This document shows, in pieces, positions 13,391 to 56,360 of a stretch of DNA of 64,000 nt; positions within the stretch are counted from its first letter, which is position 1; each line of letters starts with the position of its first letter. The DNA lies in the NCBI RefSeq assembly GCF_006345805.1, contig NC_042998.1, forward strand, positions 138,694,001 to 138,758,000, given 5' to 3'. This stretch comes from Octopus sinensis (Eukaryota). Below the pieces are notes generated by a model. That model saw only the letters and a program-made list of their open reading frames with translations, made no database searches and was not told where the DNA came from. A program made the position numbers and the translations under genes.

Positions 13391-14620
13391 TATTGGATTG
13401 GTGCATAATTAACGACCGTTTTTAAAATTCTAGATTTATTCGAAAATAAGACATCAAAGTACGGTAAAGATATTTTAAAATGATTATTCTGGAGCGTAGT
13501 CACCATCTACTTCAATAACTACTTCCTATTTGCTTAGCAAACGGTCGATTCTACGCGTAAAACATTGATGATCAGTGGACACAATCCACGTTTGAACGTC
13601 ACCTACAAGACCACCCAAATCCTTGTAGATTTTACCTGCCTTCCAATTTTTTTAACGGACGATTGACGTAATAGTCTGCAGGAACTTCAGTAGGAGAATA
13701 TAGTGGGTGCTCATGTAGCTCTCATCTTTTGTCTTTGATTGCTTGATTTACCCGCCGTTTGACATCTTGTCTCGCGTTGTCATAGTGAAAAACGATGTTA
13801 TTCTTCTTTTGAGGACGTTTGGCTTTGATAGCAGCTTCCAAGCGGTCGAGTTGAGCCAAATAATCGTCACTGTTGGCGCAGTGCTGATTTTTTCCCATTT
13901 CTGTCAGTAATAGGCTATTCACATCTCTTATCGTTTTCATCTCACCAATAACAGAAACATTGTTGACGAACTTGCGCGATGATTTCCCAGTGAATAATCC
14001 CAGAACGATCCGACCATGCACACCTTATGGCCTTCTCGTGGTAAAAGTATTTTGGAATTCTTTTGGGAGATCGGTTGCGGTTAATGCACTCTTTTTTTTT
14101 TTTTTTCATTTAGTGTCCCTGAAGAGTAAGCACGACTCATCGCTAGTGACAAGAAACTGGAGATTTTGTTTATTTCGCTGAAGTAGCTGGTTGAAAACGC
14201 GGACTCGCTCGGCCTTGTGATCGGAAATGACATGCGGATCCCATCCAGCCACTTTCCATATTTTCCCAAGCTTTTTGAGTCGCCTAACAATGGTGGAATG
14301 ATCGACTTCGAATTGTTGAGCCAGCATTTGTGTCGATAAAATTTTATCTACTTCCACCGCTTGCAAAAGAGCTTGATGATCAAAATCAGATGAACGACCT
14401 CTACCTTTCTCATCTTCTAAGCTTTTGTTGCCGGATTTGAAACACTAAAACCATCTTCTAACTTGTCTTTCACCGATATTCCGTCACTGAAGAGAGCGCT
14501 GAGATCGTGAAATACTCAACGATAGTGTGACTTTTCTCAAAGTCATAAAGCAGGATATGACGCATATAAGCCTAGTTATTGACTCTCATTGCGAAAGGAA
14601 TAAATAAAAAAAGAAAAAAA
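13391..14620 (-). mobile_element. Decayed mariner (DD34D) transposon
   Basis: Frameshifted transposase from ATG at about 14565: HTH region, WDPH (WVPHEL-like), VTSDE, FHYDNAR, YSPT..PADY; left end ttggattggtgcataatt. Confidence 0.85.
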
Positions 14621-28426: not shown

Positions 28427-29823
28427 CCACACATGTACGGTCTTCCTAAGATTCACAAGGATGGTATTCCATAAAGACCTATATTGAGCTGTAGAGGTTC
28501 AGCCTGTCATCCACTGAGCCGCTTCCTTGTGGATATAATCAGTCCATTAGCAGGAAAGTTAGCATCGTACGTGAAGAATTCCACCCACTTCACAGAATTG
28601 ATCAAGGATACCCCATTAAATCCAACCAGATGGTGAGTCTAGATGTCCCAACAGGTAAAGCACTATCGGTAATTCAAGAAAAACTAGTGACAGACACCCG
28701 TCTAAAAGAACGCGTTAGTATACCAATAAAAATCTTTATAGAAGTGTTGACCTTCTGTGTAGAAACTACCTACTTCAGTACGGACACTGATATATATCGA
28801 CAAGAAAATGGTTTAGCTATGGGTTCGCCATTGTCACCGATAATAGCCAATATATACATGGAATACTTTGAGAATTTGGCTTTAGGATCAACACCACTAA
28901 AACCAACCCTATGGCTGCGATATGTTGATGACACCTTTATACTCTGGCCCCACCAGGAAGATGTCCAAGTGCTGTTAGATCATGTGAACTCAATAAAGCC
29001 ATCCATACAGTCTACAATGGAAAAAGAAAAAGACAATCAGCTAGCATTCCTGGGCGTATTAATAACACGTACCAAGTATAGATTTGAGACATCCGTATAC
29101 TGCAAGATGACTTTCACTGGACGATACCTCAACTTCAACTCTCACCATCCATACAGTGTAAAGAGAGGGATTGCTCAGTGCCTAAAACATCGAGCAATGA
29201 ATATAAGTAGCGATCGTGATACCCACCACGAAGAAATGATCAAGCTCAGTAGCAATCTATTAAGCAACAAGTACCCCAAAAGCATATTCTCCACCCCAAT
29301 TACGAAGAAAAAAGAGGATAAAACCGATAAACTGTCCACAGTCTGTCTACCCTGTGTGAAAGGCCTCTCCGAAAAGATACAAAAGATATGCGGCCCATAT
29401 GACATCAGGACAGTATTCAAAAGTAATATAACACTTCGCAAATATCTCCTTTGAGTGAAACCACCAATAGAAGAGAATATGACTAAGAACTGTGTGTATA
29501 CCATCCCATGCAGCCGTGGTAAGTTATACAAAGGCGAAACATGCCGTCCTCTCAAAATAAGGGTAGAGGAGCATCGCAAAGCTGTGACACGAGGAGATAT
29601 TGATAAATCGGGTATAGCTGATCATCTATAGAAAAATGGAGACCACCTCCCCCTGTGGGATGAAGTTAAAATAATAGGCAGAAAATACCACTGGAAAATA
29701 CGAAAACGAAAAGAAGCAGCACATATGCTAGGGCACAACAACCTCCTAAGCAGACCGAGTGCAGATATGAACAGCATATGGGAACCGGTATTAAGGAAGG
29801 ATAGGAGAATATTAGATTTATAA
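28427..29823 (+). pseudogene. Penelope-like reverse transcriptase and GIY-YIG endonuclease, disrupted
   Basis: PHMYGLPKIHK, GLAMGSPLSPIIANIYME, WLRYVDDTF, LNFNSHHP; after stop 29452: CVYTIPC..LYKGET.RPLKIRVEEH. Several stops and a frameshift. Confidence 0.92.
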
Positions 29824-34103: not shown

Positions 34104-34330
34104 TTAGAAGGTTGTTTGTATGGCCAGTCAGAGAGTGACCATTGGTTTCGCACCTTTGGAGTGCTTAGCTGCATAGGCAACTCGTGAGATTCGAATGGCC
34201 GAGGCATATAACCTCTCTACAACTAGAGAGAGGAAATCGTCATGGTCAGTTTAGTTTGTAAACAAAAATATTCCAGAACGAAACTCTTACTAGTGATACC
34301 TTGAGGTAAGCGGAGTTGGTCCTAATTGAC

Positions 34331-34762
34331 CAGTACTGGCTATGTCTAACACAGGCCTGCCGAAGATGTTTGACACTGGTAGCATTTACTTAGTCGACAA
34401 ATGGGGAATTCCATTTTCCCACCACCAATTTCCTCTGATGACGGCACTAACTAAAAACCTTTTTGAAATTAAAAATGACCCCGAAACGTGTGAGTTTTTT
34501 TAGGGTTCTCGCTCGTATAGCTAAGCAAAGCTTATATCGTTTGGTCCCGTTGATGTATAGCCCCAGTTATTCTAAGAGCCTCCATTAAATGAGCAAGAAT
34601 CCCCATAAAACTCACTTGACCGGGATCCTCCAAAAAGGTTTTTAGTCAGTGCCCTTAGAGGAAATTAGTGTTGGAAACATGGAATTCACCATTTGCAGAC
34701 TTGGAAAATGCTAGCAGACTCAAACATTTTCGACAGGCCCGTAGTTGACATAACCAGAACCG
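34331..34762. repeat. Diverged foldback, ~185 bp arms
   Basis: 34331-34517 aligns to the reverse complement of 34589-34762. Confidence 0.8.
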
Positions 34763-35071
34763 GTTTCGTCTACGATGGTCCTGGTCTTTTGGCATAATAA
34801 ATAAAACTATGAATTCTAACCAATATATTGAGTTTAATATCAGATAATGTTTGCACTACGTAAAATGTATTAGAAATATACTCTGGCCGAATTATTAGCA
34901 TGCTGGGCAAAATGTTTAGCGGTATTTCGTCCATTTTCACGTTCAGAGTCGATAAAATAAGTAGCAGTTGAATGCTGAAGTTGATGTAATCGATTTAACT
35001 CTTCACCCGAAATTGCTGGCCTTGTGTCAAAATTTGAGGCCAATATACTTTCAGCTCTTACATTACGATAC

Positions 35072-36058: not shown

Positions 36059-36422
36059 GAAAATGAAATGTTTCAACAGAGTATCGAAATAGGGTCGCCA
36101 GTTTGGCTTATAGAAAGTTCATTGTTTGGTCTTTAAAGCTGACCAGAATATTTTGTAAATATTGATTTTATGGGATTCCATGGCATGAAATTTTTCTGAA
36201 TATATTTTTCCATCAGAACAATTAGTGAAAGTAATTATATGTGATTGAGGATAAGTACCAGTTGCAAATACTAAATCCAGGATATATGTTGATGCTAATT
36301 AACTAGCAACAAATTATGTCAACTTAGTCTTCTTCAAAATAATAATAACAAAAACAAAATTTTATCGCGGTTTCGAGCATGGAATTCCCTTTATGGAAGA
36401 TTTTTATTAAAAGAAAAATCCC
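36059..36422 (+). promoter_or_regulatory. Candidate immune-inducible proximal promoter motifs
   Basis: ISRE-like GAAAATGAAA 36059-36068; kappaB-like GGGATTCCA 36172-36180, TGGAATTCCC 36380-36389 (rc GGGAATTCCA) and GAAAAATCCC 36413-36422 (rc GGGATTTTTC); C/EBP-like TTGCAA. Motif match only. Confidence 0.5.
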
Positions 36423-36445: not shown

Positions 36446-36482
36446 TATATAAGGGTGAAGGGTCCAACGAAATGTATCATTC
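36446..36482 (+). promoter_or_regulatory. TATA box and initiator; predicted TSS about 36479
   Basis: TATATAAG at 36446-36453; Inr-like TCATTC at 36477-36482, with its A 31 nt after the start of TATAAG. Confidence 0.65.
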
Positions 36483-36629
36483 TGTTTGGATTTGTGCATT
36501 TAGACGTTGTGTAGTCTTTATCAGATATATCTTGATTACAAAGATAACCAATAAATTTTTGACTGTAGCAGAGACAATCCCACAGTGCTGTTTAATTAAA
36601 AAATATCATTCGAATATAAAAGACGAAAT

Positions 36630-36633
36630 ATGG
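36630..36633 (+). CDS. Putative helical cytokine, coding exon 1 (ATG G)
   Basis: ATGG|GTAAAT donor, phase 1, completes GAA with exon 2; 150 nt downstream of the predicted TSS. Least certain exon. Confidence 0.6.
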
Positions 36634-36752
36634 GTAAATATAAATTTTCCTTTCTTTCTTCCATTCATTCTTTCCTTCTTCCTTTCTTTCTTTCTTTCTT
36701 TCTCTCTCCATATATATATCACTCACTCTCTCCCCATCTCTCTCCCTCTCCT

Positions 36753-36783
<31 letters not shown>

Positions 36784-36809
36784 ACCTACCTACCTACCTA
36801 CCTACCTAC

Positions 36810-36874
<65 letters not shown>

Positions 36875-36883
36875 CATCTATCC

Positions 36884-36961
<78 letters not shown>

Positions 36962-37622
36962 TTTCATTTGTGTAGCTACAATGCTTGAATTCAATGTTAT
37001 ATTTTTAGTAAATTATTTGCAATTCAGTATATTTATTGGTCTATATACATAATCTATTAACGAGAAATGTAGTTATTGGTGTACATATATATATATATAT
37101 ATTGTTTTATAAACAGTTTCTAGCTTTGAATATTATTAATACTCTGTATAATCAAAACTAGTTTCACCTAGGCACAGTAGATAACTGCACTGGCATAATT
37201 GCAACGTTAATACATGTGCTTTCCTTTCTGTCTTTACTATTATCTATTGTTGACAACCAGTTAAACGCATTGGACAATATTATCATTGCATCACGTAAAT
37301 GAAATGAAATGGTTCTCAACTAACAGTCAATAACTACGCCGAAGACTCTACTTTTCAGAAGCTGAATTCTATCTAAACAGCATCTGCCATAAACAGAGAT
37401 TATGCTTGAAAGCCATAATTTAAGAATTTTACTGATAACGATGAAGATCAAGATGTAAGGAAGACAGATTTGATACTTGCTGACAAGTTTCAAGTATCAC
37501 CAACATTGAGTAAACATTTTTGTCTCTGGAGAAATAAGCTCATTGGATGGTAAAAAGCTATAATTCGGTTGTGTTGATGTCTGTGCTGTGATCAGATGAT
37601 TTTCGTAGTAACTGGTTTAGGA

Positions 37623-37660
<38 letters not shown>

Positions 37661-38347
37661 CGTAGGCGATGTGGTTTGGGAGAGTTTTAGCAAATTCATT
37701 TCTTCAGCAATCGCCTTCTTTGATAACAAAAATAGTGATTTTCATTTGACGCAGAACGTTCATAACATTGGAATTGATTCTAAATCCTGGCGGAATGAAT
37801 GTCAAAGAAGTTTTAAATTTGCCTCAGAATCCAGTGTAACAAATGTAACTAGCTTAAAGTTTTTCATCCGACACTTAACAGCTTTTCACAGCTCAATATT
37901 CTTCTGAAGACGAACTAAACCTTTAATTTGTTACTATTTTTCATTTCCTTTTCTCTAAAGTACGGAGCCACAGTGTGTAGCTAATCTGAAATCAGGATTA
38001 TTTTGTCCAGAAATGTATCCACTTCTGAAAAGAGAAATACTGATTTCTAACACTGGCACAAAATGACAAGTTTTGCGGGAAGGTATAATCGATGTAAATA
38101 ACTCCAGTACTTGACTGGTGTAATATTTACTCGATCGGAAAGATGTGAGGCAAATTCATCTCAGTGGGCTTTGTCCTTAGAACGTAGAGCTTCGTAGCTA
38201 AATAGTGCAAGATATTTTGTCCGTTGATTTAACAATTCTGCTTAAAATTTAAAAATATTAGCAGAATTTTCACTCCAAATTCTTGAGACAATCCCAGCAA
38301 AATCAAACAATTTTTATTTCATTGTTTATTTTCTCTTTGTATTTCAG

Positions 38348-38535
38348 AATTCTCAAAAACATTATTATACGCCATCCTAAATATTTCAAGTGTTCTCCTG
38401 GCAACATTAGCACCAGTCATAAGCACTGAGCTGGATCATAATTTGGATTCCACTGAAAGACAAGAAATTATCAACGAAATAGAAAATTTCAACGCTCAAG
38501 CCCTAACTTTGATTAGAAAAACTTATGAATTATAC
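38348..38535 (+). CDS. Putative helical cytokine, exon 2 (signal peptide and helix A)
   Basis: ttttctctttgtatttcag| acceptor and |gtaagt donor; the only open frame is FSKTLLYAILNISSVLLATLAPVISTELDHNLDSTERQEIINEIENFNAQALTLIRKTYELY. Confidence 0.85.
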
Positions 38536-39201
38536 GTAAGTTGATTTTTTTGTTAATTTATCATTATCGTATTTGATGGCATAGAAGATAATTTGTTTCA
38601 CCCCCAAGTTATCTCAAAAAACCATCATGGGTCCTGTATGTAATGTTATACCACCAAAAACAAATTTTTTCCTTGTCGCTCACCACTACAGACTAATGTT
38701 AGACAGTCCCTTCTACGTAGCTGGACTCCATAACAATAATATTTACTTAAAGATTGCTATGATACAGCAATGGTCCCTGCTATAGCTAAGGTACTTTTTA
38801 ATGTGCTACTAGATTACATGCTTTAGTGTATTAAAACTTGTTTTTCTGAATAAGCACTGCTGAAATTGTGGAGCATTTAATATGTCCATGCGTCTTTTAT
38901 GTCATCAGATGCGGTATTTTCACTATTTCTTGCTTGTCATTCGCCTTACTTCTGATATCATTTAAAAATTTTCCTCTGATTATCAAGAACAGGATTATAA
39001 AGAAATAATTTCTTTTACTGATTATATAATTCAAGGAGAATAGATATCGCAAACCCACTCTAGACTGTTGGGAGAGATGCACTTCATTTTTAAGATTCAA
39101 ATTTTGTAAGTTGCCTGTAAATAAGAAAACATCGATAAGGAAGGAGTTCTAGAGAGTTACAGTTCTTGGGAAAGAAGGATTAGAGGAAATTTTCAGTATA
39201 T

Positions 39202-39256
<55 letters not shown>

Positions 39257-39650
39257 ACACACACACACACACACACATATATATACATACATATATATAT
39301 GGGATGGAATAGACAGATGTATAACAACGCTATGTGAATTTTGTAATAAAAACGTGAACTTAAAAAATAGATATAAATACCCAGAAAAATTAATTTAATT
39401 TTCTTTAATTTTTCCCCCGTCTCTTATTACACGACTAAATAGGCTTAAACAATTGAAACCAGTAGCAGAGTTAATATTTTCTTCTTTTTATTAGGATAGT
39501 GTTCTCAAAGCATTTTTTCCTTTCAATTTTAATATAACTGTACATGTGTGAAACCTCTTAACCTTTTCAGCATACAAACATATAATATTACATAAACACA
39601 CATAAATATTACGCATTTGTATGATACATATGTAGATATATATTAAACAA

Positions 39651-39690
<40 letters not shown>

Positions 39691-39906
39691 CTACATATGT
39701 AATACACGTGACCCGTTGGCGATTTCTTCTTCTCCTCCTCCTTTGGATTTTTCCTTTTCTCCTTTCCGACAATTAATATACTTCTTGTGCACGTCCTCAC
39801 GTTCGTTAGTTTTTCTTCCTTTTTTCGTTTTTAGCCGTTTATTTGAATTGTTTGTTTATTTTGATTGACCACACACACACACACAGACACAGACACACAC
39901 ACACAC

Positions 39907-39954
<48 letters not shown>

Positions 39955-39990
39955 ATACATACATACATACATACACACAAATATATATAT

Positions 39991-40035
<45 letters not shown>

Positions 40036-40331
40036 TATTACTTGTATATGCGCGCGTGTATTTGTGTGATTTATTCTGACTCAGAATAAGCCCGATATTT
40101 TCTGTATGACAGTAACTTGTAGTCATTTAAATCGTTGACTCATGGTGTCTCGTCAATTTCGAAATGATGACAGCAAAGTTGACTCAGGATTTATTTGAAA
40201 TTAGAACGTAAAGAAACGAAACTAAACAATGCAATGAATTTAGTTTAATTTCCTCCTGTTTCTTCCAAATCCCTATTTTTAATTTCTCGAGCAAAAAAAA
40301 AAAAGAATATATATATATAGATACAGAATCT

Positions 40332-40583
40332 TTTACTTATTTCAGTAATTTGACTGCGGCTATGCTGGAGCACCTCCTTTAGTCGAACAAATCAACCCCG
40401 GGACTTATTCTTTGTAAGCCTAATACTTATTCTATCGGTCTCTTTTGCCGAACTGCTAGGTTACGGAGATGTAAACACACCAACATCGGTTGTCAAGCGA
40501 TGGCAGGGGGACAGAGACACACAAATACATACGTACATACATACATACATACATACATACATACATACACACACACACATATA

Positions 40584-40614
<31 letters not shown>

Positions 40615-40742
40615 GATGGGCTTCTTTCAGTTTCCGTCTACCAAATCCACTCACAAGGCTTAGTAGAAGACACTTGCCCAAGGTACCACGCAGTGGGACT
40701 GAACCTGGAACCATGTGGCTGGAAAGTAAGCTTCTTACGGCA
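40332..40742 (-). mobile_element. SINE family A in intron 2
   Basis: Reverse complement of the 15469-type copy. Confidence 0.85.
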
Positions 40743-41856
40743 CAACCACACAGTCTTTTTTAATATCATTAACATTATAAGTGAAGCAAATTGATTTCAA
40801 GCGAGAATAAAAACGGAGCCTCGGCTCAGCGGAAATATATATTGTATTTACTCGAGTACAATGCAAACTCGAATATAAAGTAACCTCCACTTTTTTGTAT
40901 CTGAAGCTCATTAATATATTTTATTCTCTTATCTCTTTGTTAAATACCTTTGAGTATAATTCTACCATTTAATTTTGAAATATTTTCGCATTATACAAAG
41001 GTAAATGTGGTATGTTGCACTTTAGGGCTTCCTTCTGATTTTCATCAATATTTCTAAATTATTTAAGTGGCATATGTTAAATAGGATGAATCCACTTTAC
41101 ATTTCAGTCAGGATTCCCGGTTAACAAATTTTATTTCACTTACATTGGTAAAGTCACTGAGAAAGACGGATATCGTAACTTACCATTCGCTTCACCTACA
41201 ATAATGAGTTACATTCTTAGTAAAATAAACTAATATTTCTACCGAGAGACTAGAAAGTATACAGAGATTACTTACATAAGATAATGAAGAATTACTATTT
41301 TTTTTCGGTAATTCGGAGACAAAAGTGCTTTACTCTCTCCTCTGAAAGATAAATGCCTGAAAACTTTATTGTATATTATGCGGGAGTATCAGCAATTAAA
41401 GACCCAATCTGGGTACATCTCAGAACACAAATTCAAAAGATGCCTGCACCATATCATTCCATCACTATCACATGGAAATTAATCTTCAAATATATCTGAA
41501 GTTAAAAGGTAAATGAATAATCACAGGTATTGGTTAGTAAATTATAGATAAAGCAGCTGCTATTCCACTCCAGCTCTAGACAAAGTATAGAAAAGCTATT
41601 CAAATTCCTTCTCCTGGTACATGAGAGATAATGTATGACATCATATACCACATGACTAGCCAAAAATGATGGGTAACATTTAAACCATTTAAACATTATT
41701 CATAATTTCTCAGTCTGTGCAGTACAGCAGAGTGTAAGGTTGATTATACAAAAGCTTAGATTTATCATCCTGTTTACCAAACACCGCAGACACACACGCA
41801 CATGCACACACACGCACGCACACGTTCACCCACACCCACCCACATACATGTACTCT

Positions 41857-41911
<55 letters not shown>

Positions 41912-42309
41912 CCCCCCCTCTCTATATTTATACACACACATGTATATACTTACGCTAATATCTATTATTTGCTGACAGAGCGATGATGTTTCCGAGAATA
42001 CCACGCTGAAATTTGACGAGGAACTTCAGTTTCACAACACGAGGAACGATAACAGAAACATCACTAATGAAGAATTAGAGGTTCGTTTATGTCTTTTTTC
42101 TTTGTACTTTTCTCTGTACTTTTTCTGGGACTTTTTCAGATACAATATGAAATTTTGAGATTGGGTAATGGTAGCATAAACATAAACAATATTCCAGTGT
42201 GCCAGGTTTCTCACAAAGTCTATATAAGTACACAGATACACACATACATTCATGCCTGCAAGTTTAAAATTCTTACATGCATTCGTACATACATACATAC
42301 ATACATACA

Positions 42310-42341
<32 letters not shown>

Positions 42342-42371
42342 CATACATACATACATACATACATACATCAG

Positions 42372-42800
42372 ATGAAAGGAATAGTCTATATAAACAGAAG
42401 ACTATGCATGAACAAGTCAGTAGAAAGCTCCGTGATGATAGTAACATCGATCATCAAAACAGTTTATCATGGACCAATAGCCGGATTACTACCTCCCACT
42501 TTGAAGGGTAAGCATTTGCAATCCAAGAACAGGAAATATTAACCAAGTACATGCTGCATAAAAGGGATAGAGATGCAGGAAAATCCGTAAAATGTGACAA
42601 CCGATGTAGACTTTGTGGAGTTCACACTGAAGATATCACCCACATCATAAGCAGTTGTCCGAAAATGTCATCACGGTATAATCTACCGATGAGACATTAC
42701 GTTGTAGCTAGGACACTCTATAATGAAATCCCTCGGAAGGATAATCCCGAGGACAAAGAAGTAAGAACCCACAATATGGTAGAAGCCATAGCCTATTTAC
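42372..42800 (+). mobile_element. R4/Dong-like LINE internal fragment
   Basis: K.MH.Q..RKL; CDNRCRLCGVHTEDITHIISSCPKMSSRY..MRH zinc-knuckle/RH motif. Confidence 0.8.
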
Positions 42801-43574
42801 AACTAAATATACTGATGCATACGGGAATATCTTCTAAGTTATAAGCGTATTGCTAAACTTGCATTTTTAATTTGAACTGTAGACCATTCGGTTGGCAGTC
42901 TTTTAGTCTATTAGCTGTAGTTTTTCATCAACGATTGTACGGCTTAAATGTAACTCCGATATAGTAACTTGCTAACAGTCATACGTTATTACTTCCCTCC
43001 CATTCAATGTAGTATTTACTTAACTTACTATTCTGTTATGTACATGAACTATTGTGTATTTTTTATTTTTTTTACAGGGATGTAATATTATCTGTTTGCT
43101 CTAATTTGAGTCATTACCCAGAATGTTTTGTGATGATTATAGCTTTAAAATATTTACTTACACATAGTTTCTTTGACATATATGTCATACAAATATACGA
43201 TATGACACAAGCAGTTGGGACAGCAAGCTGGCAGAATCGTTAACCGGAAAAGTGCTTAGCGGCATTTCTTCCGGCTCTTTATGCTCCGAGTTCAAATCCC
43301 GACTTTTGGAGGTCGATAAAATAAATCGATAAAATACGCACACCTTGTGCACTGGGACCGGTGTGATCGACTAACCCCTTCACATATACTTCAGGACTTC
43401 ATAGTAAAAAAGGCATTACATAAGCACTTTGTTGAAACTTTTATTGGTAATACATATATCTTTTGCTCAGTTTGACGACGTAACTGTTATGTGTAACCAT
43501 AACAAATCATAATAAAACATTTGGTTTGACTAAAATATATTTATAGTGAAGACTATCTATGAATACTAAATACA

Positions 43575-44230
43575 AAGTGCATTCCAGAAGTTTTTAGACC
43601 TTTTCAGGAAAGTCATTACTTTCAAAGTACAAAACACTTATCTCTTTCAAATTAGCATTCTCTGATTCAACGCACTTGTAGTGTTGCAGCCACTTCGTGA
43701 AGCCCCCATGAAAGCTCTCCAAAGTGAAGGTGTCCAGAACCCTTGTCACAGATCCCTTCATCTTGAAAACAACTGCCTGGGGGTTCTCCTTTAGTTTGGG
43801 GGACAACCAAAAACCACAGGGAGCAGGGTCTGGATTGTAGAGAGAGGGTGAGGGACAGTTTTGATGTCTATCTCTATCAAGTAGTTGGTTACCAGAATGC
43901 TCGTGACTGAACTCCTTAGGAACACACTTTGCATAAATTTTGCGCATGATCAGATTTTTCATGAATAATTGTGTAAAGTTGCCACACCAATGCCAAACTG
44001 AATGCTTATTGTCTTTATAGACACGACGTCTTCATCCAGAAAATTGCAAATTTTCTCAACCAGCTCTGATGTCCTGACGTCCCTTTCCCTCCCATACCTC
44101 TCATCGTCTCTCACCTCCTATCATCCTTGAACCGCTTGTGCTAGCGAAAAAGTTTATCAATAAATAGTCTGGAACATTTTATAAGTTTCTGTACCATTTT
44201 TGCTCAGTTAAATACAACACTTTATTACAT
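43575..44230 (-). mobile_element. Internally deleted mariner relic
   Basis: NLIMRKIYAKCVPK and PSLYNPDPAPCGFWLSPKLKE motifs. Confidence 0.7.
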
Positions 44231-44520
44231 AGCGAGCTTCCAAACATCTCGACTGCATTGTATAAACTAGTCAATGGTGACAAGCAGTGTTTTGCAGGAT
44301 GTGTTTAAGGTGCTGGTACACATGTCTCCTTCAATCTAAAATAACAAAAATAGGCAGATCAGCTCATTAGGTGAATAGTAATGATATAATAAAATTACAA
44401 TAATCTACGATAGTTATAACTTGCTCTCCTAATGAGAAAGTCTGAGAATCTCTTGAATGCAGTCGTTGCTGCTAAATTGATTCCAACAATATCATTCCTT
44501 TGTTTCACTTATTGGGCCGA

Positions 44521-44664
44521 CGCCATGCTGGGGCGCCGCCATGCTGGGGCGCCGCCATGCTGGGGCGCCGCCATGCTGGGGCGCCGCCATGCTGGGGCGC
44601 CGCCATGCTGGGGCGCCGCCATGCTGGGGCGCCGCCATGCTGGGGCGCCGCCATGTTGGGGCAC
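44521..44664. repeat. GC-rich 16-bp tandem array
   Basis: cgccatgctggggcgc x8 perfect plus one variant unit, embedded in a SINE-A-type tail. Confidence 0.95.
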
Positions 44665-44824
44665 CGTCTCAAGGGGTTTAATCAATCAAATCGACGCTGT
44701 TATTTTTTTTCAGGGTCTTGTATTTACTCCATCCACTTTTTTGCTGAAACGCTAAGTTACGAGAAATTAAGCAAACTAACACTGGTAGACAAGCAGTGAG
44801 TGATATATACTATCACAAAGACAA

Positions 44825-44906
<82 letters not shown>

Positions 44907-45195
44907 ACGCACACGCACGCAAATACGTGCATGGACGCACGACACACCTAAATATAATCAATCAAATGTATCAATAAAAGTACTTGTATAAATACTGCAA
45001 ATGCATTGTCAGGTGTTTTATAAGGTGAAATCTCCGACTGTCAAATTTTTCAAAGTCTTGGATAATATTCTTTGATCATTCTCTCTTTGATCTGTATGAC
45101 ACTCACCATTCTATCTGTGATCGCAACACTTATTCGTTTCCTTTCATTGGACATAAAATACTAATTAAGATTATTGTAATTGTTTATTATTTCAG

Positions 45196-45414
45196 AGTAT
45201 TGCACGATTAATGGTTCCATCTTTGGACCGGTATATAAAGGAATTTGAAATTGTAAGGAATATCGAACAGGAATCTCGATGCATACCCATCTATGGAAAA
45301 ACAGCGGATTGTTTTGCCAAACTCTGTCGTCGTTCTGGAAGTATAAATGTCGCTTACTGCTGTTTGGAAAGTACTATAAGAAAGCTCAAGAAAATAAAAG
45401 CATTTTTACACAAG
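45196..45414 (+). CDS. Putative helical cytokine, exon 3
   Basis: tgtttattatttcag| acceptor and aag|gtaact donor, phase 0-0; SIARLMVPSLDRYIKEFEIVRNIEQESRCIPIYGKTADCFAKLCRRSGSINVAYCCLESTIRKLKKIKAFLHK. Confidence 0.85.
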
Positions 45415-48211
45415 GTAACTATGAAATTATTTCATTATATGCTTTACTATTGAATCTTCTCTTTGTTATTTCCAGCCGGTTGTTTAAATAAGTGGCCTTC
45501 TAAATTGGCCGTGCAACAGTTTATCAGGAAAGTCTTTGATGACAAACCGAACAAATAATTCGAATCTGAGTTGTCCTCGCTCTCATTACTATATCAGATC
45601 CTGTTTATGAAGAACTCTTTCTGCAGCATAAACTTGCAAATCACACTAGAATATCTTCATTTGCATCTATACACAAAGTTCCGAGTGCATAGATCTAAAT
45701 TTAACACTTAAAAGAGAAAAAGTCTTGACATTTAGGATGTTAGGCGTTCATAAGAAAAAGAAGAAAATAAAGAACGGAAAAATAGAGAATGAGGAAAGTT
45801 GTTGGGAAAGACAGAAAAGTTTAGGAGCCAGGTGGGTATGCGGTCCTATAGGAGGGGAATTAGAAGAGGAGGAGGAATGGTTGCTATGTATGTATATATA
45901 TATACACAAACACATACACCCCCGCCCCCCCACATACACCCAAAGTGTGTGCATCTATGTATGTATCACACATAAACGATGTCTCCTCCGCTTTATTGGA
46001 GAAAAATATAAACACTTTGATCTCTGGCAACGCAACGATCATGCTTTTCTTTGTAGTTGTATGCAAGTGTTAAGCTGTTTATCGCAAAAGTTAAGTTAAT
46101 CACGCTGTCCTCATTATGTCATTGTCCTTCAAATCCCAGTAAACCACCACCACCATCATCAATACCACCACCACCACCACCACCACCACATCACTACCAC
46201 TGTTGTCTCTACCGAGAGGTTTGTGTATGCATGCTGTTGCTATCTTCGATGCTTGGATACAACTGAATAATCGATTTTAAATTCTTTACAGACGCACTGA
46301 ATTAATAAGTGGCGCCATAAAATTCAAAGACATAATGTTTGTTTCCTTATTCAGTCATTAGAAATTTTCTCATGTAAACAATGCAACACATCTTATAACT
46401 TGCCCTCAAAATAAATGAGAGGGTCACGAGTGTAGTGCCTTTTGTTAACGGTCAGAGCTGACCTAGATCTAAACAACAAAACCCACAGTGATAATTGAAT
46501 CTCCCTTAATAAAAAAAGGACATTTTAGATAATGCGGACTGATGAACATTCTACCTAAAAACATACAGAATATTAATGACTAGAATACTTTTAATCATAT
46601 GACTGCTTGATCAAGGCTAACCTTGAGTTAAAAAAAAACAAAAAACAAAACAAAACCAATCTTTAAAAATATCGATCTTGCCTTTATTCAAATTCAGAAC
46701 ACGGGACATGACTCCTACGAGATATGAGGTTGAATGATTTGAGGCTGAATGATTTGAGATTGAATGATTTTCGTAAGCTTTTCAAGAATATTATCGACGT
46801 AAATGAAGAGAAATATCGGGGTATAACGTAGACTGAGGCGGAAACGCTGTGTAGAGTAGTACTTTCCTTGAGGGATGTGCAATATATATCGTTTCCTCAG
46901 ATACTGGTTCTTACACTCCTTGGGGTTCAGTCACGTTCAGAGAAAGGCTTGAACCGCTGGTTTTATAGCAAGACCATCCCAGCTAAAATATTTACGAGGA
47001 AAACCTGTCCCCACTGATCAGGAAACAAGCTCTCCTAAGTCCCCAACTGTAGAACAAGTGACGAGTGGATGAAGACATGATTTCAACTGATGAACTAGCA
47101 GAAGAAGGCAATGTTAGATAGATTGGATATAAAAACGCAGCTCAAGCAATACCTGGGTTGACGGCAGTCCGTTGTTTCGTTGCCTAATCCTGCATGCCAT
47201 ATTTCACATTTGCCACTGAGAGAATGTGGACTAATGAACATTCTATCTAAAAAACATACGGAATGGTAATGACTAGAATACTTTTGTTTATAGGATCAAG
47301 AGTATTCTAATTATTACTATTCCTGACAAATCGGAATCCACCCTAATCAAAAATCCGCCACCGGCATTTCTTCACTAAAGAACGAAATACTGGGAAACGA
47401 AAGGCCGATGTATATGGAATGGAAAAGTTTTCTTACATACTAAAAGACATTCAAAGATTTCATAAATACTTTTTGGTATAGGGAACAAAAATTTTCTATC
47501 ATTTACTCATTTCTTAAGGGCATTATTGACCAGAATAGAACGAACGCCTTCAGCTGGGAAACCACTTGAAGACATCGTGGAATTAGTTGAATACAGAAGA
47601 GATAAAACAGCTTTTCTCTCTGTGGGAACATGACATAGTGAGATGTATCAACTATCCAAAAAATATATAAATCATCAATAAATTAAAATTCCGAACGTAG
47701 CGCTTATTGCAGTATAATTTATGCAAACAATATTCAAAAATAAATTAAAGGTTTGAAAACTTTCTTGCATGTCACATTAGTTTTTGCGGAATCAACCACC
47801 AAAATAATTTCCCATTTTCTTTTCGTTTCATTTTCTTGTGAAACTCAAATAAGAACCACCACTCGTGTTTAGATTCATTGATCAAGGGCTAGCTTTGACG
47901 GAAGGGACACAATCAGGTTGAGACATCAATGCTTCAATGTCCTCTTACGTCAATGAATCCTGTGTGTTGTCAACATACATCGTCTGAAAAGAGAAGTATT
48001 CTCTGAAGGCGAAATACAACAGCAATTTTTATATTCACGTTCAAATCTGCCTGCACATATTAAGAATGAATATGTACATCCTCGTTTTGATTCTCACTGT
48101 TTTACGTACATGTTATAATTAATCATCTGTTCATTATATTCCTGCAGAAACTCCAGTCTCAATGAGACATGGGTTGGAAATTCGCCTAACATATTAACTT
48201 TTTTTTTTCAG

Positions 48212-48364
48212 CTGTTTATAACACTTCGAAAGGATGTCAGACACAATTTGAGGAACAATATAACTCAATTTTCGCTCCAGGAACAAGAGGAATTCACAAT
48301 GACTATCCTTCGCAGAACTTCCATGCAACTAGACTACATACAGAATACATTGAAAAAGCTTTAA
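48212..48364 (+). CDS. Putative helical cytokine, terminal exon (helix D)
   Basis: Branch-like cctaac, then t10-cag| acceptor, phase 0; LFITLRKDVRHNLRNNITQFSLQEQEEFTMTILRRTSMQLDYIQNTLKKL*. Confidence 0.82.
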   Translation: MFITLRKDVRHNLRNNITQFSLQEQEEFTMTILRRTSMQLDYIQNTLKKL

Positions 48365-49049
48365 AAATAGTTTAGGAAACATTTTCCTTTCACCGAATCA
48401 TTTCATAGGTCTTCTCGGTATATTTATTGTGATTTCATTTAGTTCTGTTCAGAACCATATCTTTATAGAAGAGAAAATGCGATGTTTTGACGTCCAAGTC
48501 TTACCATGAGTATGATCAGCTTATCTTTTATTTTTTTGTCTTCTGTCTTTTACTTGTAGCAGACATTGGATTGTAGCCAAACTGAAGTATCACCTTAAAG
48601 GTTTAGTTGAACAAATTGATCCCTGTAGATAGTTTAAGTGTGGTACCTATTCTTTAAATTAAGTACTTATTCTATCGATATCTTATCCAGAACCGCTAAG
48701 TAAATATTTAGCTAAGTAAATATTTAGCTGACGGGATTCAGTTGTAGCGACGTTCTGCGTTCAAAACATGCAACATTTGACTTCCCTTTCCACTTTTACC
48801 CACTAGGAACGATAAAATATGTACCAGTAATATACTGCAACTAAATCTCTCTTATGCAAATTTATTACCTTGCTGAAGTTACACATAAAGACAAGTATTA
48901 TTTTTTTAATCTGCATAGATTTATTTAAATATATAAAAAACATCACTTGTAAATCATACACATAGACACACGCACATATACGTATGTATGTGTATATATA
49001 CATACAAACATGTGTGCGTGTGTGTACATATATATACACATATATGTAT

Positions 49050-49081
<32 letters not shown>

Positions 49082-50167
49082 ACACACGCGCGCGCACACA
49101 CACACTCAGACACAGCACTTTCAGAAGCGATGAGTGTTCTTAAAAACAGTGGTTAGGTTGTCCTCAGTTTCTTTGCTCTCAATTTTTTTTGCTGCTGAAG
49201 TAATTTTCTTTGAAGAAGAGCTGATTACTCGCTTATCAAAAATATCATGGAATCAACTCATGCGCAAAATCCATCTCTCTATAAACGTTGACCATATGCC
49301 TAATTCGAAGAAATCCAAAATTTTTACGATCTACTTTTATAATTATCCCGAAAATATTTTTTTGAAAAATTATTTATTGGAGTATGTTTATGTGTAAGTT
49401 TGTATGAGATTTTATGTATACAAAAATGTATGCATGCATGTATGTATGTATGTATGTATGTATGTATGTATGTATGTATGTATGTATGTATGTATGTCTG
49501 TCTGTCTGTCTGTATGTATGTATGTATGTATGTATGTATGTATGTATGTATGTATATATATATATATATATATATTTATTTATTCTACACACACACATAT
49601 ATACATATGTTCATACGTACAGTTCTGTATAACCATGCATGTATGAGAAAACTGTTTAAATGAGTATTTATTATTAAAATTGGATGCATGTTGTTAAGAA
49701 TCTGTGCAAGATGGTATACGCTATTTATTACACTGACTTTTTTGAAAAAAATATTCTCTTGGGTCAATAAATAAAAGGTCCATCGAATTTTCGGAAAAGT
49801 ATTAGTTATAAGGAGAAATAAGATCGGTTCTAGTTATAGTCTCGGCGGTACTTCCAGAAATACCTTGTCAAATCTTACAAAATAGATGTAAAATCTCAAT
49901 CATACTGGCCATGACATCTGACCTGAAATGTGTCACCATTAATGTTACCGCTCATGACACCAATTTAAAATTGTGTGATCTGAGCCAGAGACTATTGATT
50001 TGTATTCAGGAACCAAACAAAACGGGTGATATGATATGAACTGAAAGATCTGCGAGTACAAATCTCATTCAGAGTAATTTGTGATTCACTTTCTTAATGC
50101 TAATACTTGTCTAGAAAATTCAAATAATCATAAAAATCATATAGACACCTATAGGATGTCTTAGAAT

Positions 50168-50487: not shown

Positions 50488-51799
50488 CGAAGTGCTATCA
50501 AAACGCTCCCGGACTAGTTCTGTTGTGCATAAAAGAGTGCAGTACACGGCTGCGTGCGCAGTGAGAACTAGCAGTGACCTTCACGAGGCAGTGTATCAAG
50601 TGTCATGGCTATGTTTACTTCGCAAGTTGTGAAATTTGCTTTTTGTGATAGCGCGTATGCTGTAGTCTGCGATTTTGTCCTGGACAGGAAGTTGGAACAA
50701 AGAGTCAACGTGGAATTTTACGTTACACTTGGGAAGTCTGCTGCAAAGACATTGAAAGGCTTCGACAAGCATATGGCGACGAGGCAATTGGTCGTACGCA
50801 ATGTTTCGAGTGGCATGGGTGCTTCAAAATGGAAGAACCTCCCTGGAAGACGATGGGCAATCTGGAAGACCTGCCACGAGCGTCACCCTGGAAATGTGGA
50901 GAAAATTCGTCAGCTTTTGCATGAAAATCACTGGAGGACAATCAACGACATCGCCAATGTTGTTGGTCTGTTGTATTGGTTCGTGTAGGCAATCCTAACG
51001 GCTGAATTGAACATACAGTGTGTCTCTGCCAAGTCCCCCCCCCCGCCTGCTAACCACTGAGCGGAAAGAACATCGCATCGAAGTCAGTCAAGATCTCCGC
51101 CAGCGTACCACATAAAGGATGACCCATTCTTTATGTCAATGATCATCACCAATGAGAGTTGGGTCTTTGGGTACGACCCTGACACGAAGCAGCAGTTGTC
51201 ACAGTGGATGAGCCCATCTTCAGGACCGAAGAAAGCACGACAGAGCTGCAGCTTAATCGTGAACATGCTCATCGTTTTATTCGATATCCACAGTATTGTA
51301 CATCAAAAATTCTCCCCCCCCTGGGCCAAACCGTCAATCGAGGGTTCTACTGCGACGTTTTGAGGTGTTTGGGGGAGGACAATCGGCGAAAGTGGCCAGA
51401 GCTGTGGAGCGCGGGGTGTTGGATTTTTCACAGCGACAATGTACCCTGTCACCGAGCTCTTTTCACTCGTGAGTTTCTGGCCCAAAACAACATAGTATCA
51501 CTTCCACACCCACCCCATTCGACATATTTAGCACCTGCGGACTTCCATTTCTTCCCCAACATGAAAATGCAGCTCAAAGGTCACCGTTTTAACACCTTTG
51601 TCGAGATTCAGAGCGAATTGCAGAAAGTCCTCGACTAATTTCCGGAAAACGACTTCCTGACCGGATATGTGGCAGGAATGTTGGGACCGGTGTACTGCTG
51701 TGCAAGGTGACTATTTCGAAGATGATGTTAAAACTTAGGCAAATAAATTATTTTTTTTATTAAACATAACTAGTCTGGGAACTCTTTGATACAACCTCG
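50488..51799 (+). mobile_element. Full-length mariner with TIRs, transposase decayed
   Basis: ~32 bp TIRs flanked by TA; EQRVNVEF, SLEDD..SGRP, IITNESWVFGYDP, HSDN, HPPHS..LAPADF; frameshifts present. Confidence 0.92.
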
Positions 51800-54189: not shown

Positions 54190-56360
54190 CTCGTTGGCTT
54201 CATCTCGTATCTGATAATTTAGTTTCTTCTTTGCTGAAATCTTCCTTTATGGTGATGACATAGCTGACTATGTAGATCAATTCTTGCATGGAAGAGTCGA
54301 TGGAATTTACTGCATGGTAATGTTGGTGGAGGAGAAGGGTGATTTTGTTGAACCTTTCTCCCCTGTCGTTTGATTTCTTCCTTTTCTCTTCTGGTGGCTT
54401 TGAAAATTCTGGTTCCGATGGTGATGGAACACCGCCACTAGGTACAGTCTCGGTCTTGTGTTTCACACGATTTAGGCTCAATCCCAGTGGCTTTCAGGGT
54501 TGCTTAGAGTTGGTATCTTCGAAGAGGGCAACCCCGTGATCATTTTCCTGAAGTGAGCTCATTGAATAAGACTTGTCGTGGGAACCTTGACTCTTCCTTT
54601 CTTGCTACATGTCTGGACCATCTTTTACGGTATTTCATGATCGGTGATTCGATGCTTTGACTGTTGGCTCTTTCCAAAACTTTGTTGCTGGTGACATAGT
54701 GTCTCCATTTGATGCTCAAGATTGAACAAAGCTTTTGTTGATGAAAGTGTTCTAATTTTTGGATGTCGAAACGATATAGAGTCCAGATTTTGCAGCCATG
54801 TAGCAAGGTTGAAATGACAACAGCATTATAGACCATAATTTTTGTTGTTAAGTTAAGATCTTTGTTATTGAAGATGCATTTGATTAACTTTGCCCGGTGC
54901 AGCTCCAATTTTGCATTCCACATCCTGTTCTGAGTTGCACATGTTTGATAAAAGGCTGCCTGGATATGGAAATGCTCTACCTTTTTGAGAGGTGTATCAG
55001 AGATGGTAACATCAAAATCTGGTAAGATGGTATTTGGGGCTGTTTGTGCAAGGACCTTGGTTTTCTTGATGTTTACTGTAAGGTCAAAGCGATGGTAGGC
55101 CATAGCAAAGTTGTTCAGAGACTGTTGGAGTTCTGCTTTTGAATGACAGCGGACAGCATTGCCATCAACATATTGAAGTTCTGAGATGTGTTGCATGTGT
55201 GTTAGATGTTTTGATCGAAGTCTACTAAGAGTGAAAAGTCCTCCATCATATCGATATCTGATGTCAGCTCCTAGATTGTCTGGAAGGACTTCGTGAAGCA
55301 TTACAGCCAGATATGAGAATAACGTAGGTGCCAAGACGCATCCTTGTTTTAGTCTGCACGTGACTGGAAATTCTTCTGACAGTATGTTTTTGGTGGAATA
55401 CACGTCCAGACATGTCATGGATTGCTTGAATCAGAGAGATCAGGAGATCCAATATGATGAAAATCCTTCCACACAGCATCTCTTGGAATGCTATCAAAGG
55501 TTTGTTCAAAGTCATAGAAAAAAAAAAGGAAAATGGGCTTTTGTCGCTCCCTGCTTTTCTCTTGGCATTGCCTTGCACAGAAAATCATGTCAGTTATGCC
55601 ACGTGGATCTTTTCGGCGATGGCCTGGAGCCAATTTAGAAGTATCATGGTAAAGACCTTTCCAGTGATGGAGAGTATAAATATTCCTCTATAGTTCCTAC
55701 AGGCTTTTCGATCACTTTTTGAAGATTGTTATGATGATTGTTATGACTTTCAGTTCTTTAGGAATGTGTTAAGATTCCACATGTTTAGGTGAAGATGCGG
55801 TTTTGCAAGGATAAGCTTCTATGTTCGATCAGCTCCAAAGGAATGTTATCTGGGCATGGAGACTTCCTTGATATCATATGCTTCATAGTTTGCTTGAATT
55901 CATGAAAAGTAGGCTCCCTGTTCATTCATAGCTGAGGAAGATGATTTGGAACGTTTCTCAGGACGTTCTCAGCCGTGTTCAAGTTTCTGTTTAGGAGGAT
56001 AGAAAAATGTTTCATCCAGCATAGGAGCATGTCTAGTAGATCAGTCAGGATATTTGTATTGTCAGCTGCAAGGAGGAATCCAGTTGATGTTCGTACTGGT
56101 CCATACAGTTGTTTCGTCCCTGCATAGAAATTTCTGTAGTCACGTGCATCTACATCCTAGGATAAATCCTTCTGTTTCGGCTTTCAAACCAATGTTCTGC
56201 AGTCACTGATGGGTTCTTTTCATATCCACATCAGCTCCTCCAGCTCCTTTGTGGTATTGCCCATGCAATGCTTTTTCTTGCCACAGTTTCGACATTTCCT
56301 TCAAGCTTTCTTGTTTGGTCTTATACTTTTTGCTAGCTTAGTGAGCAGTGTGTCCCCATT
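54190..56360 (-). mobile_element. RTE-clade (BovB-like) LINE, decayed RT
   Basis: RGITDMIFCARQCQEK..F.DF..FDSI, LKQGCVLAPTLF, ELQYVD, LTVNIKKTKV, RFPRQVLFNEL..GK. Confidence 0.9.

What the first reader, a model, noticed from the sequence alone, without database searches (positions are those of the whole stretch)
36446..48364. Four-exon gene for a secreted class-I helical cytokine-like protein, missed by the ORF track
Seen in sequence: four exons with canonical GT/AG sites join in frame (phases 1,0,0) into 187 aa: MEFSKTLLYAILNISSVLLATLAPVISTELDHNLDSTERQEIINEIENFNAQALTLIRKTYELY-SIARLMVPSLDRYIKEFEIVRNIEQESRCIPIYGKTADCFAKLCRRSGSINVAYCCLESTIRKLKKIKAFLHK-LFITLRKDVRHNLRNNITQFSLQEQEEFTMTILRRTSMQLDYIQNTLKKL*. 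It has a hydrophobic signal peptide ending near A-P-V, amphipathic helices, a C-x9-C pair, and a C-terminal helix T-I-L-R-x5-L. Established knowledge: long-chain class-I cytokine genes (IL-6, G-CSF, GH family) have a tiny first exon, a phase-1 first intron and then phase-0 introns. IL-6 (C73-C83) and G-CSF (C64-C74) carry a C-x9-C disulfide, and IL-6 helix D reads LILRSFKEFL. Inference: this is a highly diverged four-helix-bundle cytokine, a candidate ligand for the molluscan Domeless/gp130-like JAK-STAT pathway, whose ligands are poorly characterised.
Basis: partly seen in the sequence, partly recalled or inferred. Interest (0 to 1): 0.95.

Follow-up and report, generated by a model that had tools for sequence, protein, structure and literature searches.

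The report
Octopus-only secreted helical protein gene
The exons are real, but they belong to a five-exon gene already annotated in Octopus sinensis (uncharacterized LOC115226017, 221 aa) that encodes an Octopus-only, probably secreted, all-helical protein, and no test I could run shows it to be a cytokine.

Summary
The window is Octopus sinensis chromosome CM016860.1. A fifth coding exon (41979-42080, 34 aa, phase 0/0) was missed. With it, the 221-aa product is identical to RefSeq XP_029652854.1, "uncharacterized protein LOC115226017".

The O. bimaculoides orthologue keeps every splice site and the ATGG|gtaaat start. Its coding sequence has no indels and half the intron divergence, with dN/dS about 0.33. 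The gene is therefore real and under constraint.

No relative outside Octopus was found in 1.8 and 5.8 billion-protein searches. Pfam and PDB sequence searches gave nothing. hhalign against human IL-6 gave 0.2% probability. The IL-6/G-CSF PROSITE signature is absent.

AlphaFold2 predicts only helices (four long, two short), but at pLDDT 42-50 and without a compact bundle. Foldseek returned no cytokine and nothing significant.

[quoted passage not shown] This copies the IL-6 layout, but class II cytokines have a similar pattern.

Verdict: a known, uncharacterised orphan gene for a probably secreted helical glycoprotein. The cytokine reading is an untested lead, with probability about 0.1-0.15.

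The parts
36446..36454 (+). TATA-like box TATATAAGG; putative proximal promoter, about 180 nt upstream of the ATG
   Evidence: Read directly from the sequence. It is identical in O. bimaculoides, but the flanks there are also about 94% identical. Its promoter function is inferred. No transcript data were available.
36630..36633 (+). Coding exon 1: ATG plus one base (phase-1 donor ATGG|gtaaat), in good Kozak context (A at -3, G at +4)
   Evidence: This is the CDS start of RefSeq XP_029652854.1: the gene range in L002 begins at this base. The site is conserved in O. bimaculoides.
38348..38535 (+). Coding exon 2 (aa 2-64): signal-peptide-like hydrophobic segment plus predicted helix A (36-64)
   Evidence: It is present in all four annotated Octopus models.
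41979..42080 (+).
   Evidence: cag|AGC ... GAG|gttcgt. It is included in the RefSeq O. sinensis, O. bimaculoides and O. vulgaris models. It differs from O. bimaculoides at 4 of 34 residues, against 1 of 73 in exon 4.
45196..45414 (+). Coding exon 4 (aa 99-171): helix B, Cys-rich B-C segment (C127, C137, C142, C153, C154) and start of helix C; the most conserved exon
48212..48364 (+). Coding exon 5 (aa 172-221 plus TAA): end of helix C, N-I-T sequon, helix D
   Evidence: Conserved in O. bimaculoides.
14016..14079 (+). Alternative distal first coding exon (MHTLWPSRGKSILEFFWEIGC, phase 1) used by the O. vulgaris model CAI9717624.1
   Evidence: tblastn match at 100% identity. Sequence and donor G|gttaat are shown. 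Its use in O. sinensis is unverified.
46695..46727 (+). Alternative terminal exon (NTGHDSYEI*) used by the O. vulgaris model; it would remove helix D
   Evidence: ttcag|AACACG ... TGA. It appears only in an annotation and has not been verified.

Best explanation
This is the gene LOC115226017 of Octopus sinensis, a five-coding-exon gene restricted to Octopus.

Shown:
- The exon-intron structure.
- Identity to the RefSeq product.
- Orthologues in O. bimaculoides and O. vulgaris.
- Purifying selection.
- No detectable relatives elsewhere.

Inferred:
- The 221-aa precursor enters the secretory pathway through its N-terminal hydrophobic segment. The likely cleavage site is after V-I-S27.
- The mature protein is about 23 kDa, N-glycosylated and almost entirely alpha-helical. 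It has four long amphipathic helices (36-64, 94-124, 150-185, 193-220), a long variable A-B loop, and a conserved Cys-rich segment between helices B and C.
- The odd number of cysteines (five) allows two internal disulfides plus one free thiol, or a disulfide-linked dimer.
- It most likely acts outside the cell as a soluble binding or signalling protein. Whether the fold is a cytokine-type bundle, and what it binds, is not established.
For: - The window is identical to CM016860.1, and the CDS range matches.
- The five-exon translation is XP_029652854.1 exactly.
- Splice sites are canonical and conserved.
- CDS divergence is 3.5% against 6.7% in introns, with 0 indels against 4.9 expected and dN/dS 0.33.
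- Only Octopus proteins were found among 5.8 billion clusters and 1.84 billion representatives.
- Two AlphaFold2 runs give all-helix secondary structure with the same helix boundaries.
- The mature part has three N-x-S/T sequons, five cysteines, only 2 Pro and 2 Gly, and strong 100-degree hydrophobic moments over the helices.
Against: - No transcript or protein evidence could be consulted, so the first exon is uncertain. Three annotations give three different N-termini. With the long O. bimaculoides N-terminus, the hydrophobic segment would be an internal membrane anchor.
- That hydrophobic segment is about 21 residues, which is long for a signal peptide. No signal-peptide predictor was available.
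- The structure models have low confidence (pLDDT 42-50) and are not compact.
- dN/dS rests on only 23 substitutions between two close species.
Confidence: 0.7

Rival explanations
1. One reading: a highly diverged long-chain class-I (IL-6/G-CSF/GH-like) four-helix-bundle cytokine. It would bind a Domeless/gp130-type receptor and activate JAK-STAT in octopus.
For: - The corrected gene has five coding exons and four introns, one in the signal-peptide region and three in the mature domain, with phases 1,0,0,0. PMC13081863 describes this layout as conserved in IL-6 genes.
- From my own knowledge, not verified here, GH, EPO and G-CSF share it.
- Helix-to-exon mapping is parallel: helix A in exon 2, the A-B loop in exon 3, helices B and C in exon 4, helix D in exon 5.
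- The protein is secreted-type, glycosylated and about 190 aa mature. It has four long amphipathic helices and a long A-B loop that evolves fastest.
- A C-x9-C pair is present.
- JAK/STAT ligands outside Drosophila are largely unknown (PMC9195186), so an undetected ligand is plausible.
Against: - No cytokine family appears in Pfam at E <= 10, and there is no PDB sequence hit.
- hhalign against human IL-6 gives probability 0.2%.
- The PS00254 signature is absent.
- The C-x9-C lies between helices B and C, not before helix B. There are five cysteines, not four.
- AlphaFold2 gives no confident bundle, and Foldseek returns no cytokine.
- The predicted C-D link is only 2-7 residues, and the last 75 residues contain no Pro or Gly. 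If correct, this gives a C-D hairpin that is incompatible with up-up-down-down topology.
- The phase pattern is shared with class II cytokines, and its elements are common ones.
Confidence: 0.12
2. A secreted helical protein with a job other than receptor signalling, for example a reproductive, egg-coat or pheromone protein, a salivary-gland or skin secretion, or a lipid-binding or carrier protein of the haemolymph. Genus-restricted, fast-evolving secreted proteins are often of these kinds.
For: - It is an orphan restricted to Octopus.
- It is very helical with few Pro and Gly, as in apolipoprotein-like or coiled-coil proteins.
- An odd cysteine count suggests covalent oligomers.
- Constraint is moderate (dN/dS 0.33).
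Against: - Nothing positive points to any particular one of these roles.
- No expression data were available.
- No match to any such family in Pfam or PDB.
Confidence: 0.3
3. A type II (signal-anchor) membrane protein, or a non-secreted coiled-coil protein. Translation would start in an upstream exon, leaving the hydrophobic segment as an uncleaved internal transmembrane helix.
For: - The O. bimaculoides RefSeq model XP_014770371.1 puts 110 residues before the hydrophobic segment. The O. vulgaris model puts 21 residues before it, from a distal exon that is 100% present in this window.
- The hydrophobic stretch is about 21 residues, which is transmembrane length.
Against: - The three N-terminal extensions are unrelated to each other.
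- The O. bimaculoides model depends on a donor created by a 3-nt insertion that is absent in O. sinensis.
- One older model draws its first exon from a foldback repeat.
- The ATGG|gtaaat start is conserved and has a strong Kozak context. V-I-S|T fits the -3/-1 rule.
- Sequons and cysteines all lie C-terminal to the segment, as expected for a lumenal or extracellular domain in either case.
Confidence: 0.12
4. A spurious or decaying gene model: transcribed noise, or a recent de novo ORF with no function.
For: - There are no relatives outside one genus.
- The structure prediction has low confidence.
- Transposon debris fills the introns and flanks.
Against: - The open frame, all eight splice sites and the start are conserved between species.
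- The coding sequence has half the intron divergence and no indels (P = 2e-4 and 0.008).
- dN/dS is below 1.
- Four annotation efforts predicted the same internal exons independently.
Confidence: 0.05

Closest known systems
RefSeq XP_029652854.1, uncharacterized protein LOC115226017 (Octopus sinensis), with orthologues XP_014770371.1 / A0A0L8HRT9 (O. bimaculoides) and CAI9717624.1 (O. vulgaris)
   Same: The five-exon translation from this window is identical over all 221 residues. The orthologues are 94-100% identical over the shared exons.
   Different: The orthologue models differ from one another only at their N- and C-terminal exons.
IL-6 / G-CSF / MGF family of long-chain class-I helical cytokines (Pfam PF00489, PROSITE PS00254)
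   Same: [quoted passage not shown]
- Phases 1,0,0,0.
- Similar size.
- Predicted long amphipathic helices.
- A long A-B loop.
- A C-x9-C pair.
   Different: - No sequence or profile similarity.
- The family signature is absent.
- The C-x9-C is in the B-C segment.
- There are five cysteines.
- The predicted C-D link is very short.
- No confident bundle is predicted.
Class II helical cytokines (IL-10 family, IFN-lambda)
   Same: These are multi-exon genes with phase-0 introns throughout. IFNL2/3 have a first exon of four codons followed by a phase-1 intron (PMC2654155). They are secreted helical proteins of similar size.
   Different: There is no sequence match. Their fold has six or seven helices and was not tested here. 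They are known only from vertebrates.
Drosophila Unpaired (Upd1-3), the only well-established invertebrate Domeless ligands
   Same: They are secreted, glycosylated, predicted helical, evolve fast and are hard to trace outside their own lineage (my own knowledge).
   Different: The exhaustive search returned no insect protein. Upd proteins are larger and basic, whereas this mature protein has pI 6.4.

Membership tests
RefSeq gene LOC115226017 (Octopus sinensis) | Same genomic position and identical product | tested here: met
   Window bases 26630-58364 are identical to CM016860.1:138720630-138752364, and the CDS span is the same. The 221-aa translation is an exact match to XP_029652854.1.
IL-6/G-CSF/MGF family (PF00489, PS00254) | Match to the family profile (Pfam IL6) or to a member sequence | tested here: not met
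   hmmscan against Pfam-A at E <= 10 lists only DUF3969, VWA and Pox_polyA_pol_N, all below their cut-offs. hhalign against human IL-6 (sequence verified against PDB 8qy5) gives probability 0.2% over 10 columns.
IL-6/G-CSF/MGF family (PF00489, PS00254) | Signature C-x(9)-C-x(6)-G-L-x(2)-[FY]-x(3)-L (as quoted in PMC5716431) | tested here: not met
   A regular-expression search finds it in human IL-6 but not in the octopus protein. Only the C-x9-C part (C127-C137) is present, and it is followed by FAKLCRRS.
IL-6/G-CSF/MGF family (PF00489, PS00254) | Four conserved cysteines forming two disulfides in the helix A / A-B loop / helix B region | tested here: not met
   There are five cysteines (127, 137, 142, 153, 154). 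All lie after predicted helix B and all are in exon 4.
IL-6/G-CSF/MGF family (PF00489, PS00254) | [quoted passage not shown] | tested here: met
The coding exons are 4, 188, 102, 219 and 153 nt, with phases 1,0,0,0. The feature is not exclusive to this family.
Class-I long-chain helical cytokines in general | Up-up-down-down four-helix bundle with long A-B and C-D crossover loops | tested here: inconclusive
   Two AlphaFold2 runs gave pLDDT 41.8 and 49.6 and pTM 0.32 and 0.39. They show helices but no confident packing. The A-B loop is long (about 30 aa), but the C-D link is only 2-7 aa. Foldseek against PDB gave a best E of 0.4 and no cytokine.
Class-I long-chain helical cytokines in general | Cleaved signal peptide and secretion | tested here: inconclusive
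   The features were read by eye: n-region MEFSK, a hydrophobic core, and V-I-S|T fitting the -3/-1 rule. No predictor was available, and other annotations give alternative N-termini.
Class-I long-chain helical cytokines in general | Binds a cytokine-receptor homology module and activates JAK-STAT | not testable with these tools
   This needs recombinant protein and a receptor or STAT assay.
Drosophila Unpaired family | Detectable sequence relationship to Upd1-3 | tested here: not met
   phmmer over 1.84 billion representatives returned only the O. bimaculoides orthologue and one translated tandem repeat.

The most novel reading that the evidence does not exclude
The protein is a genuine cytokine-type four-helix bundle. 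It could be an extremely diverged relative of the IL-6/G-CSF/GH lineage, retaining its 1-0-0-0 five-exon gene structure, or an independent invention. It would serve as the endogenous ligand of the cephalopod Domeless/gp130-like receptor. That would make it the first helical JAK-STAT cytokine identified in a lophotrochozoan.
Probability: 0.12. Interest if true: 0.85.

Novelty: already known. Interest (0 to 1): 0.35.

Why it matters
As it stands, this is an annotated but uncharacterised orphan gene. Its main practical value is a corrected gene model and a list of conflicting N- and C-terminal annotations across three Octopus species.

If the cytokine reading were proved, it would matter. Ligands of the JAK-STAT receptor Domeless are firmly known only in Drosophila and are described as largely unknown in other invertebrates (PMC9195186). 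A gene sharing the IL-6-type exon-phase architecture in a mollusc would push helical cytokines back to the bilaterian ancestor and give cephalopod immunology a testable ligand. The present evidence does not justify that claim.

Tried and rejected
- Word-index homology search with the 187-aa protein, and again with the mature 193-aa part at E <= 10. Only the Octopus cluster was found.
- Exhaustive phmmer over 1.84 billion representatives. It found only the O. bimaculoides orthologue plus P0005, a translated tandem repeat that I rejected as junk.
- Pfam at E <= 10 and PDB sequences at E <= 10. Nothing meaningful.
- AlphaFold2 on the full precursor alone, then on the mature protein aligned with the O. 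bimaculoides orthologue. Both were low confidence. Foldseek against PDB on both gave only weak coiled-coil or BAR-like noise. I treat these as inconclusive, not as evidence against a bundle.
- hhalign against human IL-6. No relationship.
- Exact look-up of P0001 in assemblies. Not on record.
- No transcript-derived (Logan) copy of the protein appears in its cluster, so no RNA evidence could be obtained.
- Metagenome scan for host-contaminant copies. Nothing.
- Literature search for the locus and accession names. No paper.
- A kappa-B-like GGAATTCC 58 nt upstream of the TATA-like box, considered as a hint of immune regulation. Rejected as not significant: 2 in the window against 0.8 expected, and 19 of 100 shuffles reach that count.
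- ATTTA motifs after the stop codon: 7 per kb against 2.6. This is weak, and part of it comes from a local duplication.

Full report
**Where the window comes from.** A locus fetched for the protein (L002, GCA_006345805.1, CM016860.1:138720630-138752364) is base-for-base identical to window 26630-58364. The window is therefore Octopus sinensis chromosome CM016860.1, and window base 1 is about 138,694,001. It is AT-rich (30-41% GC). It is full of microsatellites and transposon debris.

**Checking the observation.**
- Exon 1 is 36630-36633 (ATGG|gtaaat).
- Exon 2 is 38348-38535.

All have canonical AG/GT sites with good polypyrimidine tracts, and the phases are 1,0,0. The translation equals the quoted 187 aa exactly. 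Position 36446 is the start of a TATA-like TATATAAGG. The ATG has A at -3 and G at +4, and an in-frame stop lies 33 nt upstream.

**The missed exon.**
- The single database relative found was O. bimaculoides A0A0L8HRT9.
- tblastn places these residues at window 41979-42080. The sequence there reads gacag|AGC...GAG|gttcgt, 102 nt, phase 0/0.
- With this exon the product is 221 aa. An exact-sequence look-up shows it is RefSeq XP_029652854.1, 'uncharacterized protein LOC115226017 [Octopus sinensis]'. The 187-aa version is not in the collection.

So the gene has five coding exons and is already annotated. It was 'missed' only by a prokaryote-style ORF list.

**Is it a real gene?** I fetched the O. 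bimaculoides locus (L001) and located every exon in it.
- All eight splice sites, the ATGG|gtaaat start and the stop codon are conserved.
- The coding sequence differs at 23 of 663 sites (10 synonymous, 13 non-synonymous). dS is 0.076, dN is 0.025 and dN/dS is 0.33.
- The coding sequence has no indel. The 8.8 kb of alignable intron has 6.7% mismatches and 65 gap openings.
- At the intron rates one expects 44 mismatches (P = 2e-4) and 4.9 gaps (P = 0.008) in the coding sequence.
- Replacements concentrate in exon 3 (4 of 34) and spare exon 4 (1 of 73).
- Four annotation efforts agree on the internal exons: JGI O. bimaculoides, Gnomon O. bimaculoides, Gnomon O. sinensis and the O. vulgaris annotation.

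**Disagreement at the ends of the models.**
- The O. vulgaris model starts in a distal exon that is 100% present at window 14016-14079. It ends in a small exon at 46695-46727.
- Gnomon's O. bimaculoides model adds 110 N-terminal residues through a far-upstream exon. It also uses a donor created by a 3-nt insertion that O. sinensis lacks.
- The old JGI model takes its first exon from one arm of a foldback repeat at window 34329-34764.

No transcript data were accessible. The protein's cluster holds no transcript-derived member. The true 5' end therefore remains to be shown.

**What the protein looks like**.
- The N-terminus is MEFSK followed by about 21 mostly hydrophobic residues and V-I-S|T. 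This is signal-peptide-like, though long enough to be a membrane anchor.
- The mature part is 194 aa, 23 kDa, pI 6.4. It has three N-x-S/T sequons (N71, N91, N187) and five cysteines (127, 137, 142, 153, 154). It has only two prolines and two glycines.
- Two AlphaFold2 runs agree on secondary structure. Long helices lie at 36-64, 94-124, 150-185 and 193-220, and short ones at about 71-86 and 134-145.
- One O. bimaculoides replacement puts a proline (L74P) in the first short helix. That argues this segment is loop.
- Confidence is poor: pLDDT 41.8 and pTM 0.32 for the precursor alone, and 49.6 and 0.39 for the mature protein aligned with its orthologue. The models are not compact.

**Testing the cytokine interpretation.**
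- *Sequence.* Pfam at E <= 10 shows no cytokine family, and PDB sequences show nothing. An exhaustive phmmer over 1.84 billion representatives finds only the orthologue and a junk repeat. A second word-index search at E <= 10 finds only the same cluster.
hhalign against the octopus alignment gives probability 0.2%.
- *Family signature.* C-x9-C-x6-G-L-x2-[FY]-x3-L (quoted in PMC5716431) is found in IL-6 but not here.
- *Cysteines.* The C-x9-C pair is real, but it sits after helix B. In IL-6 and G-CSF it precedes helix B (my own knowledge of those structures).
- *Fold.* Foldseek of both models against PDB gives a best E of 0.4 and no cytokine. With such models this is uninformative.
- *Topology.* The predicted C-D link is 2-7 residues, and the last 75 residues contain no Pro or Gly. 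If true, this makes a C-D hairpin and contradicts an up-up-down-down topology. A reading in which 172-192 is the crossover cannot be excluded.

- It has five coding exons and four introns, one in the signal peptide and three in the domain. PMC13081863 describes exactly this layout as conserved from lamprey to human.
- The phases are 1,0,0,0.
- Helix A falls in exon 2, the variable A-B loop in exon 3, helices B and C in exon 4, and helix D in exon 5.
- From my own knowledge GH, EPO and G-CSF share this plan. I could not verify those phases in the held literature.

The pattern is not diagnostic. IL-10 and IFN-lambda genes have all-phase-0 introns, and IFNL2/3 have a four-codon first exon followed by a phase-1 intron (PMC2654155). 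From my own knowledge, phase-1 introns are common in signal peptides generally.

**Conclusion.**
- The gene is real, constrained, restricted to Octopus in everything searchable here, and already annotated as uncharacterised.
- The most defensible mechanism is a secreted, glycosylated, helical extracellular protein that may form a disulfide-linked dimer.
- Membership of the IL-6/G-CSF family fails every sequence-level test.
- 'Works like a helical cytokine' remains an open lead, at about 0.12. It rests on gene architecture and general protein character only.
- Ligands for invertebrate Domeless receptors are indeed poorly known (PMC9195186, PMC5645147). That is why the lead is worth the RNA-seq and deep-alignment tests listed above, and why it should not be asserted now.

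Noticed in passing
window 34329-34764: Foldback (MITE-like) inverted repeat: 108-nt arms at 80% complementarity, with an inner 23-nt pair at 96%. The old JGI O. bimaculoides model A0A0L8HRT9 takes its first coding exon (MGLPKMSDAGS...) from one arm, so that N-terminus is probably an annotation artefact.
   Followed up: partly
window 14016-14079 and 46695-46727: Alternative first and last coding exons used by the O. vulgaris annotation (CAI9717624.1). Both are present intact in this O. sinensis window. They could be real isoforms, and the second would remove helix D. They could also be prediction errors.
   Followed up: partly
L001 34546-34570 versus window 36630-36650: O. bimaculoides has a 3-nt insertion (AGT) just after the ATGG|gtaaat donor, and this creates a second GT donor. 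Gnomon used that donor, together with a far-upstream exon, to build a 321-aa model in which the hydrophobic segment is internal.
   Followed up: partly
window 44513-44666 (intron 3) and 36753-36961 (intron 1): A GC-rich 16-nt minisatellite (TGGGGCGCCGCCATGC, 9.6 copies, 97% matches) and a (TCTA)52 microsatellite that starts 120 nt after coding exon 1. Many further TA, AC and TACA arrays lie in the introns.
   Followed up: no
window 28630-29454 (+), 54540-55418 (-), 42551-42844 (+): Retrotransposon remnants: two reverse-transcriptase fragments (Pfam RVT_1, E = 1e-9 and 2e-6) and a zf-RVT fragment inside intron 3. By eye, ORF pieces at 43594-43962 (-) and 50605-51638 (+) look like mariner-type transposase, but they gave no Pfam hit at E <= 0.01.
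   Followed up: partly
window about 7000-7100: A run of N (an assembly gap) flanked by CA/GT microsatellite. It shows up as X in the ORF translations.
   Followed up: no
window 36381-36388: GGAATTCC, a kappa-B-like palindrome 58 nt upstream of the TATA-like box. It is conserved in O. bimaculoides but not statistically unusual: 2 in the window against 0.8 expected.
   Followed up: yes
window 48365-49364: Seven ATTTA motifs in the 1 kb after the stop codon, against 2.6 per kb in the window. Two come from a local duplication (taagtaaatatttagc twice). No canonical AATAAA or ATTAAA lies within 1.1 kb; the nearest variants are AGTAAA at 48699 and 48715.
   Followed up: partly
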